The notes under the pieces are model-generated. The model searched no databases. It saw nothing but the letters and a program-made list of their open reading frames with translations, and was not told the origin of the DNA. From positions 124,001 through 188,000 of the IMG/VR virus record IMGVR_UViG_3300040801_004034: a stretch of DNA of 64,000 nucleotides, one strand, 5' to 3'. Positions within the stretch are counted from its first letter, which is position 1; the number at the start of each line of letters is the position of its first letter. The translations under genes and the position numbers were made by a program. Positions 1 through 6,291 of the stretch are shown piece by piece.

Positions 1-152
1 GATGATGATATTCTAGATTATAGACTCACACAACATTTTATTGAAACCAACAGTATCAATGGTGATGTGCGTGTTTTTGATTATGGTCAACACCATTTTG
101 GTTCTGAGAAATGTGTTAATGAAATTGTTGAGTACATAAATAACTATGTACC

Positions 153-752
153 ATGCGATTAAATTTTCAAGAGTTCTTTTGTGAATCATTTTCAAACCTT
201 TTCATTAACAAAGATGATGAAAAGCGTAGACAGTTAGCAGATCAAATCCATAGTATGGTGGGTGCATCATATCAGAAAGCTACTGGTCAGCAAAACTTAG
301 CTTTTGGTATGCAGTCTCCAGAAGCTATGCTTGAAACCATACCATTTTGGAAAATCGCAAAACGTGATGGACGTATAAGAGCAGTCATTCTTTATAAAGA
401 TAAGAATGGAAGAAAATCGATGGCAATTGCAACCGATAGTACTAAAGAAGGAAAAAATCTTCTCAAACAAATGCTGCATGATGACATGATACGAAATCGA
501 GCATACAGTGAAATTTCCGATCCATCACTTTCATTCAGAAAGAAAATTCTCCCAGCAAATTTATCAATTCAAGACATAGCTATACCATTTGAAGAAGTTC
601 AGAAGATGATGCCTAATATAACTAGACCACCACAAGATGATCCGCATGTTATAAAACATCCTGAACTTGAGCCATATTTCTATCAGAGAGAGTTCGGTGG
701 AGATCTAAAGACAAAAATAATGGTCGGTCAAATTGGTAATGAAATATCATAA
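153..752 (+). CDS. hypothetical phage protein (199 aa)
   Basis: Intact ORF with TAAATA just upstream of the ATG. Confidence 0.7.
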   Translation: MRLNFQEFFCESFSNLFINKDDEKRRQLADQIHSMVGASYQKATGQQNLAFGMQSPEAMLETIPFWKIAKRDGRIRAVILYKDKNGRKSMAIATDSTKEGKNLLKQMLHDDMIRNRAYSEISDPSLSFRKKILPANLSIQDIAIPFEEVQKMMPNITRPPQDDPHVIKHPELEPYFYQREFGGDLKTKIMVGQIGNEIS

Positions 753-754
753 AG

Positions 755-853
755 GGAACTATCATATAATAGAGACAGAAATACGTTCTTTATCAGAAAA
801 ATCAAAAATAGTTCAAAAAAAAATAGTTTAAAAAGAAGGAACTATGATATACT
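755..853 (+). promoter_or_regulatory. two tandem GGAAC-N5-TATAAT promoters
   Basis: GGAAC-TATCA-TATAAT 755-770 and GGAAC-TATGA-TATACT 838-853; motif recurs about 20 times in the window. Confidence 0.7.
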
Positions 854-876
854 TGGCATAAGTAATAACAACGACA

Positions 877-978
877 ATGAATTTACATACACAATATAGC
901 TTTAACAAATGTGAGTCTGATATTAGACAATCACGCCCGATAGCGAATGTGCTGAATACAGGAGGTAGCGGGGATTGA
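877..978 (+). CDS. putative attenuator leader peptide (33 aa, MNLHTQYSFNKCESDIRQSRPIANVLNTGGSGD)
   Basis: ATG 877 to TGA 976-978, between the promoters and a terminator; below the ORF-track cutoff. Confidence 0.5.
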   Translation: MNLHTQYSFNKCESDIRQSRPIANVLNTGGSGD

Positions 979-1023
979 CCACGAGATAATTTTAAGTTCT
1001 GAAAAAGAACAATAATAGAATTG

Positions 1024-1056
1024 AACTCGGGTCAGAAAAAGGACACCGGGTTTTTT
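1024..1056 (+). terminator. intrinsic terminator (attenuator)
   Basis: AACTCGG-GTC...GAC-ACCGGGTT hairpin followed by a T tract. Confidence 0.65.
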
Positions 1057-1082
1057 AATGATTTTAAAGATAGACAAAAATA

Positions 1083-1098
1083 GGAACACAGATATAAT
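1083..1098 (+). promoter_or_regulatory. GGAAC-N5-TATAAT promoter at the head of the RNA array
   Basis: GGAAC-ACAGA-TATAAT. Confidence 0.7.
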
Positions 1099-1284
1099 TT
1101 AAACATAATTTAGTAAATGGCGCCTTGAGCCAAATAAAGAATCAAGGTTAGTACGTCCACTGTAAAAGCATCATGGGCACCTAAACCAATTATATAATTG
1201 AGAGAGGTGAAAGTAAGATTTATAAAATGGTGGCTGCACCAGTGAAGTTGAGATTTTTCTCCTTCTGGTGCAGCCTTAACTTTC

Positions 1285-1369
1285 AGGAATATGGCAGCTG
1301 TTCGATTCAGTAACTCTTCGGAGATGTGGTGTTGTCAGATACGTTCAAAGTTAGACTCCTTGTATTCCT
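1285..1369 (+). ncRNA. permuted tRNA-like (YrlA-like) RNA
   Basis: Closing stem AGGAATA/TATTCCT with a T-arm (CTG-TTCGATT-CAG) near the 5' end. Confidence 0.35.
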
Positions 1370-1710
1370 CAATTTTCAAATCCTAGTCGTCTAGAAGCAG
1401 AGGACACCAGCCAGTTCGTGCTGGAAACGATAAGTTGCGATTATCCTAGGACGTTTTAATCCATATAATCTAGGCAAGAGCTTGCAGGCTTATCATTTAG
1501 GTTATATGGCGCCAGATATATAGTAACTGCAATTACAAATATACCTGCGTTGTATCGGTCGGCTGGCGGAGACGCCCTCGTGAAGAGGGAGGTGATTGGT
1601 TCGATTCCAATATACAAATTCGATATTTATACCTATGCAAGTCATGTGTGAGTCATGGGGACGAAACATATAATAAACCACATGTCATGTATATGTTTCA
1701 AATTTTATAA

Positions 1711-1797
1711 GCCTAGGTGGCTCAGTTGGTCGACAGCGCCTGCTTTGTAAGCAGGATCCTACAGGACTCGTGGGTTCGAATCCCACCCTAGGCTCCA
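1711..1797 (+). tRNA. tRNA-Thr(UGU) with long variable arm
   Basis: Cloverleaf, loop TTTGTAA, CCA encoded. Confidence 0.9.
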
Positions 1798-1839
1798 TTT
1801 TGATTGTAGTTTTCGAGTTACGTTTGATTAAGTATTTAT

Positions 1840-2364
1840 ATGATAACATGTATGCAATGCAATAAATTGATTCCTAATCAGGAATCGATAGCTCATAAAT
1901 ATCAAAAACGTTTTTGTGATAGTTCTTGTAGTGCAAAATACAATAACACAAAACGTAAATATAAAAAACAACCAAAAAGCAAGTGTTTGAATTGCGATAA
2001 AGAAACAAAATATAGTACAACGAAGTTTTGTTCGCATCAATGTTCAGGAGATTTTAGAGCAAAACAAGCATATAAAACCAATATCGAAAAATATAAAGCT
2101 GGTGAATTAACAAATCGTAATCGTATATATTCATTTCTTGTTGAAGAATTTGGTAATATATGTAATATATGCCAGTTAGATGGTAACAATTGGAACGGTA
2201 AACCTATCAGATTATGGGTAGATCATATTGATGGGAATGCAACAAATAATTCACCATCGAATTTCAGACTGTTGTGTCCAAATTGCGAATCACAAACTGA
2301 TTTTTGTAGAGGTAAGAATTATGGAAATGGTAGATCATCAAGAGGTCTAAAACCATACGGGTAA
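1840..2364 (+). CDS. HNH homing endonuclease with zinc fingers
   Basis: CxxC repeats; VDHIDGNATNNSPSNFRLLCPNC HNH motif. Confidence 0.85.
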   Translation: MITCMQCNKLIPNQESIAHKYQKRFCDSSCSAKYNNTKRKYKKQPKSKCLNCDKETKYSTTKFCSHQCSGDFRAKQAYKTNIEKYKAGELTNRNRIYSFLVEEFGNICNICQLDGNNWNGKPIRLWVDHIDGNATNNSPSNFRLLCPNCESQTDFCRGKNYGNGRSSRGLKPYG

Positions 2365-2370
2365 TTTAAT

Positions 2371-2445
2371 GGATCTATAATATAACGGCTATTATCACCG
2401 GTTTTTACCCGGCTTATCCGGGTTCAAGTCCCGGTGGATCCACCA
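2371..2445 (+). tRNA. tRNA-Lys(UUU)
   Basis: Cloverleaf, loop TTTTTAC, CCA. Confidence 0.85.
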
Positions 2446-2448
2446 TTT

Positions 2449-2690
2449 AACGTCCCTAGAATCACAGGTATAGGTGCGCCAATGCAAACTATGCGGCATT
2501 GGTCAGTAATGCAATGCACCTTTGATGTAGATTTGCGAGATACGAAGTAGGTGTTGATAGCAGATAGCATAGGCTGTAAACAACACTGAGATAGTTGATC
2601 GTGTAGGAGAATTGCCTAGGAGGGATGACCATCTACAGTTCGAAAGCCGGAAGTCTTGGGTGTTAGGCTTGACAATCGGAGAGACGATAC
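2449..2690 (+). ncRNA. orphan structured RNA, family A copy 1
   Basis: GC-rich, noncoding, paired ends; motifs shared with 16292-16440. Confidence 0.5.
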
Positions 2691-2699
2691 AAATTTAAT

Positions 2700-2776
2700 G
2701 GGCGTGTAGTTCAAGTGGCAGAATACCGGATTTGCAATTCGGAGGTTTGGGATTTCGATTATCCCCACGTCCACCA
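2700..2776 (+). tRNA. tRNA-Ala(UGC)
   Basis: Cloverleaf, G3-U70, CCA. Confidence 0.9.
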
Positions 2777-2896
2777 TCTTAAAAATGATAACAGTATGGT
2801 CAGAACATAGCTATTCTAGATTAACTATGCAATGCACTTGAAGATTAGGACACTTCTTAAGTTATCGATAATGTATATCAGTCCTATACAATTTAT

Positions 2897-3014
2897 GATC
2901 GAGGTCGTTATAATCGACTCACCAAAATAATGTAGAGTACTATATGTTATTGCGGGAAATAAAAGATATGTAATGAGCTATTGCACAGGGGTGAAAATCC
3001 TCCATCGATCACCA
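2897..3014 (+). ncRNA. tRNA-like RNA with acceptor stem, T-arm and CCA but a noncanonical core
   Basis: GATCGA/TCGATC-A-CCA; T-like arm GGGG-TGAAAAT-CCTC. Confidence 0.45.
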
Positions 3015-3961: not shown

Positions 3962-4636
3962 ATGGAATATATTACCATTATTTGCAAAAATTGCGAACAA
4001 GAACATCGATACCCTAAACGTCATTATATTCAAAGACAGAAAACAGGAAGACCGCATAAGATATATTGTTCAAGACATTGTGCTGATATCGGTAAATCGG
4101 TCAAATACGAAAAAAGACATTGTGTTGTATGTAAAGATGAATTTAATTGTAAATCAAATTTAAAAACAAAATGTTGTAGTCGTAAATGTGCTGATAATTT
4201 ACATAATCCTAAAAAGAAATGTGGCAAATGTAAAAAACCTGATTGTAATAATATTACCAGTAATCATCGAAAAGTATTATGTGATATATGTATTGGTGAA
4301 GGTAGATCATATTATAAAGCATATAATTACATGTTACCAGATGAGCTTCCTCTTTATAAAGTTATAAAACAAAGAGGTTCAAATAAATTTGATGTAGTTA
4401 GATCATGGGCTCGTAAAAAAATGATCAACAGTGGTGTAGAATTAAAATGCGATGTTTGTGATTATGATATTCATGTTGAAGCAGCACATATTAAACCTTT
4501 AAGTACATTTTCACCAGATACACTCATTTCAGAAGTTAACTCATTTGATAACTTAAGATTGATGTGCCGTAATCATCATTGGGAGCTTGACCATGGGGTA
4601 TTAAAAGAAAAAATTTCATCGCCGCGAAGCTCTTAG
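3962..4636 (+). CDS. HNH homing endonuclease with zinc fingers
   Basis: CxxC repeats; EAAHIKPL...NLRLMCRNHHWELD. Confidence 0.8.
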   Translation: MEYITIICKNCEQEHRYPKRHYIQRQKTGRPHKIYCSRHCADIGKSVKYEKRHCVVCKDEFNCKSNLKTKCCSRKCADNLHNPKKKCGKCKKPDCNNITSNHRKVLCDICIGEGRSYYKAYNYMLPDELPLYKVIKQRGSNKFDVVRSWARKKMINSGVELKCDVCDYDIHVEAAHIKPLSTFSPDTLISEVNSFDNLRLMCRNHHWELDHGVLKEKISSPRSS

Positions 4637-4709
4637 TAGAGCAGTTGGATTTATATCCCAATGTCTAGATAAGAAACAGGAAGGGGAGCGTAACCCCTCG
4701 CGGCGACCA
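4620..4709 (+). tRNA. atypical tRNA-Ile(UAU)
   Basis: Loop TTTATAT, noncanonical T-loop AGCGTAA, long variable region, CCA. Confidence 0.6.
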
Positions 4710-4932: not shown

Positions 4933-5004
4933 CTGGGAAGCTCATACGGAAGAGCACACGGTCGATAACCGTGAGGTAGTCGGTTCGAATCCGATTACTA
5001 CAGC
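4933..5004 (+). pseudogene. degenerate tRNA-Ile(GAU)
   Basis: D, anticodon and T arms intact; acceptor stem poorly paired; no CCA. Confidence 0.5.
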
Positions 5005-5606: not shown

Positions 5607-5778
5607 GAGGGGGTATCCTAGTGGTAAGGGACAGACTCTGTCGTATATGAATTAGTTTGGAAGCGTACGGTAGTACATTCTAATTTCATATTATGGCAAC
5701 CTGTTGTTGACGAAAGCAAAACAAAGCGCTTTGTTTTGTGGGAGACGTTGAAGGTTCGATTCCTTTTCCCGCTCGCCA
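5607..5778 (+). ncRNA. tRNA scaffold with the anticodon arm replaced by an about 100-nt multi-hairpin domain
   Basis: Acceptor, D and T arms plus CCA flank a long structured insert. Confidence 0.55.
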
Positions 5779-6215: not shown

Positions 6216-6291
6216 GGCGCCATCGTCTAAAGGTCAGGACAATACCCTTTCAAGGTAGAAATCGAGAGTTCAAGTCTCCGTGGCGTCACCA
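6216..6291 (+). tRNA. tRNA-Glu(UUC)
   Basis: Loop CTTTCAA, CCA. Confidence 0.9.

What the first reader, a model, noticed from the sequence alone, without database searches (positions are those of the whole stretch)
877..1056. Leader-peptide attenuator at the head of the tRNA array
Two promoters lead into a 33-codon ORF whose TGA overlaps GACCACGAG (977-985). That segment pairs with CTCGGGTC (1026-1033), the 5' arm of the terminator, forming a long alternative hairpin. A ribosome reaching the stop would block the antiterminator, whereas stalling upstream would allow read-through. This would switch on the phage tRNA/ncRNA array when host translation is impaired (inference from classical attenuation). 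Caveat: another promoter lies just after the terminator at 1083.
Basis: partly seen in the sequence, partly recalled or inferred. Interest (0 to 1): 0.7.

Follow-up and report, generated by a model that had tools for sequence, protein, structure and literature searches.

The report
Switchable terminator before phage tRNA array
Just upstream of a 40-tRNA gene array in an uncultured T4-like phage, a transcription stop signal competes with a long rival hairpin whose base starts at the stop codon of a 33-codon reading frame, so it looks like a translation-sensed attenuator, though this is computational only and the array also has its own promoter.

Summary
Every coordinate is right. The two upstream "promoters" (755-770, 838-853) and the one after the terminator (1083-1098) are copies of a phage-specific promoter motif, GGAAC-N3-GATATAAT, found about 60 times in this 221-kb genome. 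H buries the whole 5' arm of a canonical terminator T (1023-1053 plus U6).

In the P2 transcript H wins (-40.5 vs -37.2 kcal/mol; P(T) = 0.03). None of 300 shuffles does this, and 17 of 19 other terminator candidates in the genome, including all the clear ones, keep P(T) at 0.85 or more. Blocking a ribosome-sized footprint at the UGA restores T.

Translation of the ORF is plausible but unproven. One distant relative (L204) has the same order: small ORF, stop codon in the hairpin's 5' arm, terminator, promoter, tRNA array. Its overlap is weaker and its peptide unrelated.

Against a true "switch for the array": P3 drives the array independently, the equilibrium depends on the assumed 5' end, there are no tandem control codons, and no RNA data cover the region.

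Verdict: a probable translation-sensitive terminator (about 0.4), a new variant of a known kind.

The parts
755..770 (+). P1, a phage early-type promoter (GGAAC-N3-CATATAAT) that starts 3 nt after the stop of the upstream gene 153-752. The inferred start site is about 777.
   Evidence: PWM score 21.6 bits. The motif class has 37 strict and 66 relaxed copies genome-wide against 2-6 in shuffles. The start site is inferred from the class rule that ATG lies 6 nt after the -10 element in the leaderless genes.
838..853 (+). P2, a second promoter of the same class (GGAAC-N3-GATATACT). The inferred start site is about 860, which gives a roughly 17-nt A-rich leader without a Shine-Dalgarno sequence before ATG 877.
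   Evidence: PWM score 21.4 bits. The upstream composition fits this genome's gene starts, which are A-rich, and only 12 of 173 long ORFs have an SD-like 4-mer.
877..978 (+). 33-codon ORF (putative leader peptide or small protein). Its UGA at 976-978 forms the first three bases of hairpin H.
   Evidence: for the ORF. Codon log-likelihood is 0.159 per codon, in the lowest 9% of real-gene windows and the top 6% of spurious ORFs. Codons 1-19 are mostly preferred; rare codons cluster at codons 20-26. The peptide uses 19 of the 20 amino acids (P about 0.002-0.007, post hoc). No homologue was found. Only 3.5% of shuffles give an ATG ORF of 30 or more codons ending in the 5' arm.
911..972 (+). Two local hairpins inside the ORF (911-934 and 936-972). 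The second is GC-rich, covers codons 20-32 and contains AGGAGG at 959-964. They may be RNA polymerase pause hairpins (inference).
   Evidence: Both are present in every fold of the P2 transcript.
976..1034 (+). Hairpin H, the antiterminator. It has 22 bp in helices 976-980/1030-1034, 982-985/1026-1029, 987-994/1016-1023 and 996-1000/1006-1010.
   Evidence: Energy -18.3 to -19.3 kcal/mol, z = -5.6, 0 of 200 shuffles. It is homologous in architecture and apex sequence to L204:13143-13189, with 3 both-sided changes in the 5 basal pairs.
1006..1021 (+). Degenerate promoter-like element (AGAAC-N3-AATAGAAT) forming the 3' half of H. It is the counterpart of a bona fide promoter in the same position in the relative.
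   Evidence: PWM score 8.7 bits, in the top 0.011% of genome positions but below the 12-bit cut-off. The L204 counterpart scores 12.3 bits.
1023..1056 (+). Intrinsic terminator T. The stem is 1023-1033/1042-1053 with bulged A1045 and an 8-nt loop, followed by a U6 tract at 1051-1056. Its entire 5' arm is shared with the 3' strand of H.
   Evidence: Energy -13.2 to -13.7 kcal/mol, z = -3.3. Mutual exclusion with H is shown.
1071..1098 (+). P3, the array's own promoter. It has a -35-like TAGACA (1071-1076), GGAAC (1083-1087) and the -10 TATAAT (1093-1098). The inferred start site is about 1105.
   Evidence: It matches the sigma-70 consensus at 11 of 12 positions and scores 22.1 bits on the PWM.
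1117..1514 (+). First product of the P3 transcript, a roughly 400-nt structured RNA of unknown family closed by UGGCGCC/GGCGCCA. The first tRNA (Phe, 1549-1619) follows it.
   Evidence: Fold z = -3.5, 0 of 100 shuffles. No Rfam match at E up to 10. tRNAs.

Best explanation
This is a translation-sensitive (attenuator-type) intrinsic terminator. It sits between upstream transcription (the upstream operon plus two phage early-type promoters, P1 and P2) and the tRNA/ncRNA array, which also has its own promoter P3.

The RNA from 976 to 1056 has two mutually exclusive folds. One is the long hairpin H (976-1034). The other is the terminator T (1023-1053 plus U6). H is transcribed first, is more stable, and should pre-empt T, so naked or poorly translated RNA reads through into the array.

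A ribosome that completes the 33-codon ORF stops on the UGA that forms the first three bases of H. It then covers roughly 961-990 and unzips the basal helices. That frees 1023-1033 to pair with 1042-1053, and transcription ends at 1056. A ribosome stalled earlier, for example at the rare-codon cluster at codons 20-26, leaves H intact.

The net effect would be extra read-through from P1, P2 and the upstream operon into the tRNA array when translation is slow, added to constitutive P3 transcription.

Shown by computation: the promoters, the ORF, H, T, their mutual exclusion and its non-randomness, and the footprint dependence of the fold.

Inferred: transcription start sites, translation of the ORF, transcription-translation coupling, and the physiological sign and size of the effect.
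For: - H is exceptional (z = -5.6) and occupies all of T's 5' arm.
- For the P2 transcript the H state is -40.5 and the T state -37.2 kcal/mol, with P(T) = 0.03.
- None of 300 dinucleotide shuffles of the upstream region depresses T this much.
- 17 of 19 other terminator candidates in the genome keep P(T) at 0.85 or more; the two exceptions are weak candidates.
- At every transcript length from 1047 to 1056, H stays lower in energy than T.
- The estimated H-to-T refolding barrier is about 12.5 kcal/mol, so T should not form in time once H exists.
- Blocking 961-990 or 964-987 (ribosome at the UGA), or 949-978, makes T the minimum-energy fold. Blocking 919-948 or 943-972 keeps H.
- The distance from the stop codon to the end of the U tract is about 80 nt, comparable to about 70 nt in E. 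coli trpL (my knowledge).
- The ORF start context fits this SD-less, A-rich genome. Codons 1-19 are preferred codons and rare codons cluster at 20-26.
- The distant relative L204 has a 36-codon ORF whose UAG lies in the 5' arm of a homologous hairpin. That hairpin abuts and overlaps by 4 nt a terminator, followed by a promoter and a tRNA array. The chance of such an ORF is 2.8-3.5% per locus.
- L204's terminator is also more contested than 95.5-99.5% of shuffles.
Against: - P3, which matches the sigma-70 consensus at 11 of 12 positions and carries the phage motif, lies 27 nt after T and can drive the array regardless.
- There is no evidence that the ORF is translated. The codon score is ambiguous, no homologue appears among 1.8 billion representative proteins or in PHROGs, and the window and L204 peptides do not align.
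- There are no tandem control codons and no anti-antiterminator.
- The equilibrium is sensitive to the 5' end. P(T) is 0.03 from 860 and 0.11 from 600, but 0.85 from 777 (the P1 start) and 0.98 from 700.
- In L204 the overlap is only 4 nt and P(T') is 0.63-0.96, so mutual exclusion is not clearly conserved.
- In L204 the hairpin's 3' half is a working-looking promoter, so the inverted repeat may serve DNA-level functions.
- Only one informative relative exists.
- No RNA-seq contig covers 753-1560.
Confidence: 0.4

Rival explanations
1. This is a self-contained small gene or small RNA cassette. P2 (and P1) to T makes a roughly 200-280-nt RNA that either encodes a 33-aa protein or acts as an sRNA. 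T is its constitutive terminator and also insulates the upstream operon. H is a 3' stabilising or processing (RNase III-type) hairpin. The array is driven only by P3, with no regulatory link.
For: Terminator, then promoter, then tRNA is a recurring layout in this lineage. L178 has a 70-aa ORF, a terminator, a promoter and then tRNA-Leu. Within this genome, the terminator at genome 122437-122469 is followed at once by a promoter. The L178 ORF looks like a real conserved gene: the C-terminal end of an ORF in L121 reads very similarly in the sequences (judged by eye, not aligned). P3 is strong. With the P1 or upstream-operon 5' ends the equilibrium fold favours T. In L204 the ORF has its own late-type leaderless start.
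Against: This does not explain why this terminator has its whole 5' arm sequestered by an exceptionally stable upstream hairpin, when every clear terminator in the genome is unopposed. Both peptides are hydrophilic, unrelated to each other and have no homologues. No Rfam family matches.
Confidence: 0.28
2. This is a DNA-level palindrome rather than an RNA switch. H reflects an inverted repeat built around a promoter copy, active in the relative and decayed here. It could be an operator for a dimeric regulator or a pair of back-to-back promoters. The RNA competition with T would then be a by-product.
For: The 3' half of H' in L204 is a bona fide GGAAC...TATAAT promoter whose start site falls inside the terminator's 5' arm. 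The window's counterpart at 1006-1021 is the fourth-best motif match in the region, at 8.7 bits. Primary sequence is best conserved at the apex (AAGTTC...GAACA). Other promoters nearby also have inverted GTTC partners, for example 808-814 against 839-845 and 756-762.
Against: The repeat is 59 nt long with bulges, far longer than an operator. The basal helix is kept through both-sided changes in 3 of 5 pairs, although it lies outside the promoter motif. The roughly 60 ordinary promoters show no conserved partner upstream of GGAAC. This rival gives no reason for the ORF stop codons to fall in the 5' arm at both loci.
Confidence: 0.15
3. This is a conditional terminator set by a trans-acting factor other than the ribosome. 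A phage or host RNA-binding protein, a small RNA or tRNA, or a metabolite would bind 860-995 and decide between H and T, in the manner of a riboswitch, T-box or TRAP/PyrR system. The ORF would be fortuitous.
For: The H/T alternative is real. Two further local hairpins at 911-972 could form a sensor domain. The element sits before a tRNA array, where tRNA sensing would make sense.
Against: No T-box, riboswitch or other cis-regulatory Rfam family matches, even at E up to 10 on the 821-nt region. The upstream 860-975 does not align convincingly between the window and L204. The ORF position recurs in L204.
Confidence: 0.1
4. This is a chance arrangement: an ordinary terminator for the upstream operon that happens to lie next to a stable hairpin and an accidental ORF.
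For: ORFs of this length are common in AT-rich DNA. There are 76 ORFs of 20 or more codons in the first 4 kb.
Against: None of 300 shuffles reproduces the competition, and none of 200 reproduces the stability of H. The layout recurs in a distant relative whose shared conserved proteins are only about 50% identical.
Confidence: 0.04

Closest known systems
Leader-peptide transcription attenuators of enterobacterial amino-acid operons (trpL, hisL, leuL, thrL, pheL)
   Same: A short ORF lies just downstream of the promoter(s). An intrinsic terminator's 5' arm can instead pair with an upstream segment, giving 2:3 versus 3:4 alternatives. The ORF's stop codon sits at the start of segment 2, so a ribosome reaching it favours the terminator. 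The stop-to-U-tract distance is similar, at about 80 nt.
   Different: There are no tandem control codons; the peptide has 19 different amino acids. There is no segment 1 anti-antiterminator, so untranslated RNA is predicted to read through rather than terminate. The downstream 'operon' is a tRNA/ncRNA array with its own promoter directly after the terminator. The element is in a phage. Translation would start without a Shine-Dalgarno sequence.
Lambda PR'-tR' unit (the 194-nt '6S' RNA) and Q antitermination
   Same: Promoter(s) are followed about 200 nt later by a strong terminator in a phage. By default this could make a short RNA, and read-through feeds a large downstream block.
   Different: Lambda uses a protein that modifies RNA polymerase at the promoter. 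It has no competing RNA hairpin and no ORF. No Q-like gene or binding site was looked for here.
T-box leaders of Gram-positive aminoacyl-tRNA synthetase genes
   Same: Both are antiterminator/terminator switches tied to the tRNA economy.
   Different: No T-box, specifier loop or Rfam match is present. T-boxes regulate protein genes, not tRNA genes.
T4 tRNA gene cluster with stable RNAs C and D (my knowledge)
   Same: Both are T4-like phages with a tRNA cluster interspersed with small stable RNAs and homing endonuclease genes, transcribed from upstream promoters.
   Different: No attenuator has been described there, to my knowledge. This array is far larger (about 40 tRNAs, a tmRNA and GOLLD) and has dedicated tandem promoters.
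IMG/VR contig IMGVR_UViG_3300021959_000071 (L204:12968-13788), the only homologous module found
   Same: It has a promoter, a roughly 36-codon ORF, a long three-segment hairpin with the same apex, a terminator, a promoter 20-27 nt later, an untranslated stretch of 450-540 nt, and a tRNA array. The ORF's stop codon lies in the hairpin's 5' arm.
   Different: The hairpin/terminator overlap is 4 nt rather than 11. The hairpin's 3' half is an intact promoter. The ORF is leaderless behind a late-type motif. The peptide and the upstream RNA cannot be aligned with the window's.

Membership tests
Leader-peptide transcription attenuator (trp/his type) | Short translatable ORF between the promoter and the terminator | tested here: inconclusive
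   A 33-codon ATG ORF lies 17 nt after the inferred P2 start. Its context fits this SD-less genome. The codon score is intermediate. No homologue was found. There are no ribosome or RNA data.
Leader-peptide transcription attenuator (trp/his type) | Intrinsic terminator (GC-rich hairpin plus U tract) upstream of the regulated genes | tested here: met
   The stem is 1023-1053 with U6 to 1056, at -13.2 to -13.7 kcal/mol and z = -3.3.
Leader-peptide transcription attenuator (trp/his type) | Antiterminator that is mutually exclusive with the terminator | tested here: met
   H (976-1034) shares 1023-1034 with T. P(T) is 0.03, none of 300 shuffles matches it, and 17 of 19 other terminator candidates keep P(T) at 0.85 or more. 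Caveat: the result depends on the assumed 5' end.
Leader-peptide transcription attenuator (trp/his type) | Ribosome position on the leader ORF decides which fold forms | tested here: met
   This was tested in silico only. A footprint at the UGA gives T; footprints at or before codon 28 give H. Whether it happens in cells cannot be tested here.
Leader-peptide transcription attenuator (trp/his type) | Cluster of control codons for the sensed amino acid | tested here: not met
   No amino acid is repeated in tandem, and the 33 residues include 19 different amino acids. There is only a loose cluster of rare codons at positions 20-26.
Leader-peptide transcription attenuator (trp/his type) | Anti-antiterminator (1:2) so that untranslated RNA terminates | tested here: not met
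   In the P2 transcript, 936-972 folds on itself and leaves 976-985 free for H. Only long-range pairings from 721-729 or 785-798 play that role, and only in longer transcripts.
Leader-peptide transcription attenuator (trp/his type) | The regulated genes depend on read-through, with no promoter after the terminator | tested here: not met
   P3 lies at 1071-1098, matches the sigma-70 consensus at 11 of 12 positions and scores 22.1 bits for the phage motif.
Leader-peptide transcription attenuator (trp/his type) | Conservation of the ORF and alternative structures in relatives | tested here: inconclusive
   One distant relative (L204) keeps the ORF position, the hairpin, the terminator and the promoter, but with weaker overlap. 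No other homologue was found in IMG/VR or JGI metagenomes.
T-box or other curated cis-regulatory RNA (Rfam) | Match to a covariance model | tested here: not met
   No cis-regulatory family was found at E up to 1 on 20 kb, or at E up to 10 on 740-1560.
Phage GGAAC / extended -10 promoter class of this lineage | GGAAC, 3 nt, (T)G, ATATAAT | tested here: met
   P1, P2 and P3 score 21.4-22.1 bits. The class is defined by about 60 genomic copies and recurs in many IMG/VR contigs.

The most novel reading that the evidence does not exclude
The 33-codon ORF is a general sensor of translation capacity rather than of one amino acid. It samples 19 of the 20 amino acids and ends at the foot of the antiterminator. 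A shortage of almost any charged tRNA would stall ribosomes upstream, keep the antiterminator closed, and let transcription from the upstream operon, P1 and P2 run into the phage's own 40-tRNA array. Such shortages could arise from host shut-off, codon-usage mismatch, or host anticodon-nuclease defences. The result would be a feedback loop in which a virus measures tRNA supply and tops it up.
Probability: 0.13. Interest if true: 0.85.

Novelty: new variant of a known kind. Interest (0 to 1): 0.55.

Why it matters
Large phages carry tRNA arrays whose regulation is almost unknown. One current view is that phage tRNAs compensate for host tRNA loss during infection or defence. A ribosome-sensed terminator at the head of such an array would be the first case I know of where a phage couples its tRNA supply to the state of translation. 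It would also extend leader-peptide attenuation to viruses, to RNA-gene targets and to SD-less or leaderless translation systems.

Even if the ribosome link fails, the locus is useful. It offers a clean, testable bistable terminator and documents the promoter grammar of an uncultured T4-like lineage: an extended -10 element with an upstream GGAAC, and leaderless early and late genes.

Tried and rejected
- **Close relatives for covariation.** blastn of 1-3000 against 50,697 phage genomes found only HNH and tRNA fragments. Protein-anchored searches with the upstream gene 153-752 gave at most 42% identity, with no tRNA array downstream (IMG/VR and JGI metagenomes).
It gave 41 IMG/VR hits. These were not inspected one by one, but none shares DNA similarity with 753-1560.
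- **Four further pattern scans for the hairpin/terminator/promoter module.** All returned only L204 plus chance hits in coding DNA.
- **Single-sequence covariance model of H.** It found nothing in 0.72 Mb of lineage contigs and did not recover L204 either, so it was too insensitive to count as evidence.
- **RNA evidence.** Three metatranscriptomes from the source sample hold no contig over 753-1560. Only 2271-2512 and small pieces further on are covered.
- **Peptide homology.** One spurious low-complexity hit among 1.8 billion representatives, and nothing in PHROGs. The 5.8-billion-protein word search refuses queries under 40 aa.
- **Recoded genetic code** (suggested by a tRNA with anticodon CUA): rejected, because the standard code already gives full ORF coverage.
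- **Late-type motif at 858-864 as the ORF's promoter:** rejected, because the spacing is 12 nt against the class norm of 5.
- **'GTTCTTT box' downstream of ncRNA promoters:** rejected as too common in the genome.
- **L178 as a third example:** downgraded, because its 70-aa ORF looks like a real conserved gene and P(T) recovers to 0.94 in the longer context.
- **Homology of the post-P3 RNA** (1099-1560) with L204's counterpart: none was evident.
- **Relatives of the assembly:** The genome search does not serve these for a virus record.

Full report
**Context.** The window is bases 124001-188000 of a single 221,292-bp contig with 35.5% G+C and the standard genetic code. DNA runs from one microbial-mat metagenome hold it; it is near-identical to a 201-kb contig in one of them, which may be its source. 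It is a divergent T4-like myovirus. It has gp23-like major head, portal and sheath-stabiliser proteins and RNA ligases. The major capsid protein is only 32-35% identical to those of cyanomyoviruses, its best matches. A long plus-strand gene block ends with the gene at 153-752. Next come about 800 nt of non-coding DNA. After that comes an array of about 40 tRNA genes with a tmRNA and a GOLLD RNA, interspersed with HNH endonuclease genes. The finding lies in the non-coding stretch.

**Observation check.**
- The 33-codon ORF (ATG 877 to TGA 976-978) and the segments GACCACGAG (977-985) and CTCGGGTC (1026-1033) are at the stated coordinates.
- The terminator is a stem at 1023-1033/1042-1053 with one bulged A, followed by U6 to 1056. 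It folds at -13.2 to -13.7 kcal/mol with z = -3.3.
- The generic scan missed the terminator because of the bulge, but it did pick up the promoter after it. My own scan lists it among the few clear hairpin-plus-U-tract terminators of the genome.

**The promoters are real and belong to a phage-specific class.** GGAAC, three bases, usually G (often TG), then ATATAAT, occurs 37 times as a strict pattern. It occurs 66 times at a PWM score of 12 bits or more, against 2-6 in shuffled genomes. The motif reads as an extended -10 promoter with an upstream GGAAC element and no conserved -35.

In most copies an ATG follows exactly 6 nt after the -10, so the mRNAs are leaderless. A second motif, ATAA[AG]TA, resembles the T4 late promoter and peaks at 5 nt before an ATG. 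Only 12 of 173 long ORFs have a Shine-Dalgarno-like 4-mer, and gene starts are preceded by A-rich sequence.

P1 (755-770), P2 (838-853) and P3 (1083-1098) score 21.4-22.1 bits. None is followed by a leaderless ATG. P3 also has a -35-like TAGACA and matches the sigma-70 consensus at 11 of 12 positions. The same promoter motif fills dozens of IMG/VR contigs, which defines a lineage.

**The alternative structure.** It folds at -18.3 to -19.3 kcal/mol with z = -5.6, and none of 200 shuffles does as well. H uses 1016-1034 as its 3' strand and therefore contains the terminator's whole 5' arm.

- For the transcript from the inferred P2 start (860-1058), the H state is -40.5 and the T state -37.2 kcal/mol. 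The ensemble probability of the terminator pairs is 0.03.
- In 300 dinucleotide shuffles of the upstream 163 nt, the median P(T) was 0.965. None reached the native value.
- Of 19 other terminator candidates in their native context, 17 kept P(T) between 0.85 and 0.995 with 165 nt of upstream context. The two exceptions are weak candidates.
- H stays lower in energy than T at every transcript length from 1047 to 1056.
- A direct-path estimate puts the H-to-T refolding barrier at about 12.5 kcal/mol. That is slow compared with the time RNA polymerase should spend on the U tract. This last step is inference.

**A ribosome-sized footprint decides the predicted fold.**
- Blocking 961-990 or 964-987 (a ribosome with the UGA in its A site), or 949-978, makes the terminator the minimum-energy fold.
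- Blocking 919-948 or 943-972 leaves H in place.

**Caveat on the equilibrium.** The equilibrium is not robust to the assumed 5' end. From 777 (the P1 start) P(T) is 0.85, and from 700 it is 0.98. In those transcripts 785-798 pairs with the apex of H, or 721-729 pairs with 973-981. From 600, P(T) falls back to 0.11. I give these long-range pairings less weight than the local hairpin, but they cannot be dismissed.

**Is the ORF translated?**
- *For.* The 17-nt A-rich leader fits how this genome's genes start. Codons 1-19 are almost all preferred codons. Rare codons cluster at positions 20-26, where a stalled ribosome would leave H free. Only 3.5% of shuffles give an ATG ORF of 30 or more codons ending in the 5' arm of H.
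- *Ambiguous.* The codon log-likelihood of 0.159 per codon lies in the lowest 9% of real-gene windows and the top 6% of spurious ORFs.
- *Against.* No homologue was found among 1.8 billion representative proteins or in PHROGs. The peptide is hydrophilic with no obvious fold.
- *A curiosity.* The 33 residues include 19 of the 20 amino acids. This has P of about 0.002-0.007 under three null models, but it was noticed post hoc.

**Relatives.** No close relative exists in the phage, IMG/VR or JGI metagenome collections. I used the promoter motif as a lineage tag and found one informative contig, L204 (IMGVR_UViG_3300021959_000071). Of the 27 ORFs of 60 or more codons in the 14.9-kb locus fetched from it, three match the window's genome, two at about 50% protein identity and one at 30%.

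Its layout is as follows:

| Element in L204 | Position |
|---|---|
| Promoter | 12968 |
| 36-codon ORF behind a late-type leaderless start | 13045-13155 |
| Long three-segment hairpin H', with the same apex (GUUC, A-rich loop, GAAC) and an AU-rich middle | 13143-13189 |
| Terminator | 13186-13208 plus U7 |
| Promoter | 13235 |
| Untranslated RNA | about 540 nt |
| tRNA array | from 13788 |

The ORF's UAG (13153-13155) lies in the 5' arm of H'. The chance of that is 2.8%. Three of the five basal pairs differ on both sides between the two hairpins.

Three things differ from the window. The hairpin and terminator overlap by only 4 nt. P(T') is 0.63-0.96, still in the lowest 0.5-4.5% of shuffles. 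The 3' half of H' is itself a good promoter whose start site would fall inside the terminator's 5' arm.

The window's counterpart at 1006-1021 is a decayed copy scoring 8.7 bits. The two peptides do not align.

A second contig, L178, also shows the order ORF, terminator, promoter, tRNA. Its 70-aa ORF looks like a real conserved gene, and its terminator competition disappears in longer context.

Further pattern scans and a single-sequence covariance model found no more homologues.

**Mechanism.** I consider a translation-sensitive terminator the best single explanation, at about 0.4. Upstream transcripts read through by default because H pre-empts T. Ribosomes that finish the ORF open the base of H and allow termination. 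Ribosomes that stall earlier do not.

The effect on the array can only be modulatory, because P3 follows 27 nt after the terminator.

The rivals are:
- a plain small-gene or sRNA cassette with a constitutive terminator and a stabilising or processing hairpin (0.28);
- a DNA-level palindrome around a promoter copy, active in L204 and decayed here (0.15);
- a switch set by some other factor (0.10);
- chance (0.04).

**Comparison with known systems.** The element works like a trp/his-type leader-peptide attenuator in its 2:3 versus 3:4 logic and in where the stop codon sits. It fails three defining features tested here: it has no control-codon run, no anti-antiterminator, and a promoter downstream of the terminator. 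I therefore do not file it as a member of that family, only as a new variant of the principle. No Rfam cis-regulatory family matches. A full-text search for a phage tRNA-array attenuator found no precedent.

**Limits.** No transcript, ribosome or structure-probing data exist. The three metatranscriptomes of the source sample do not cover 753-1560. Start sites are inferred from motif geometry. Conservation rests on a single distant relative. Several statistics (the ORF position window and the amino-acid diversity) were defined after seeing the data.

Noticed in passing
Whole genome; in the window, for example 15199, 19523, 40673 (-) and 48839 (-): The lineage has a specific promoter: GGAAC-N3-(T)G-ATATAAT followed 6 nt later by ATG. 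Dozens of early genes are therefore leaderless. There are about 60 copies here, and the same motif fills many IMG/VR contigs (up to 27 per 12 kb).
   Followed up: partly
Whole genome; in the window 3950, 6920 and 17028: A T4-late-like motif ATAA[AG]TA has a sharp peak at 5 nt before ATG (26 of 140 copies), so late genes also look leaderless. Only 12 of 173 long ORFs have an SD-like 4-mer. This points to a host with SD-independent initiation. The host is unknown.
   Followed up: partly
window:1117-1514: The first product of the P3 transcript is a roughly 400-nt strongly structured RNA (z = -3.5) closed by UGGCGCC/GGCGCCA. It has no Rfam match and no detectable similarity to the equivalent 540-nt stretch in L204.
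   Followed up: partly
window:18401-18612; genome 203133-203621 (L088:1133-1621): Two more clusters of three tandem promoters are not followed by an ATG. One lies just upstream of the GOLLD RNA (a further sigma-70-like TTGATA...TATAAT lies between the second and third, and the third has TTGACA at -35). The other lies on the plus strand inside the minus-strand early-gene block. L218 has a similar divergent pair at 9043 and 9192.
   Followed up: no
window:19025-19472, 16670-17019, 14150-14226, 4620-4709: The array holds a GOLLD RNA (179 bits, with an embedded tRNA-like 19094-19167) and a tmRNA with the tag GENQLMAA. It also holds a tRNA with anticodon CUA (an amber suppressor, although the genome uses the standard code) and a rare tRNA-Ile(UAU).
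   Followed up: no
window:3800-3913, 6216-6288, 4939-4995: Rfam tRNA matches that ARAGORN did not call. One is 114 nt long and may carry an intron or insertion. One covers only model positions 9-63 and may be a fragment.
   Followed up: no
window:18869-18925: A tandem duplication of about 28 nt (ACTAACTCAGTACTTCCTTAGAATAAA, twice) lies in the untranslated stretch before GOLLD.
   Followed up: no
window:1840-2364, 3962-4636: HNH homing-endonuclease genes sit between tRNA genes. The first is preceded by a late-type motif with leaderless spacing.
   Followed up: partly
window:877-975: The putative leader peptide contains 19 of the 20 amino acids in 33 residues (P about 0.002-0.007 under three null models, post hoc). 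The L204 counterpart has 17 of 20 in 36 residues, which is not significant.
   Followed up: yes
window:785-798 vs 997-1010; 721-729 vs 973-981: Long-range complements to the apex and base of hairpin H exist only in transcripts that start at P1 or in the upstream operon. In equilibrium folds they restore the terminator (P(T) 0.85-0.98). If real, P1 and P2 transcripts would behave differently at T.
   Followed up: partly
window:2271-2512: This is the only stretch of the first 6 kb that a contig from metatranscriptome X4 covers at full length and identity (the end of the HNH gene, tRNA-Lys and downstream). Run X5 adds one full 155-nt piece at 5622-5776 and two 21-nt fragments of an unrelated contig at 3338-3358 and 4800-4820.
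   Followed up: no
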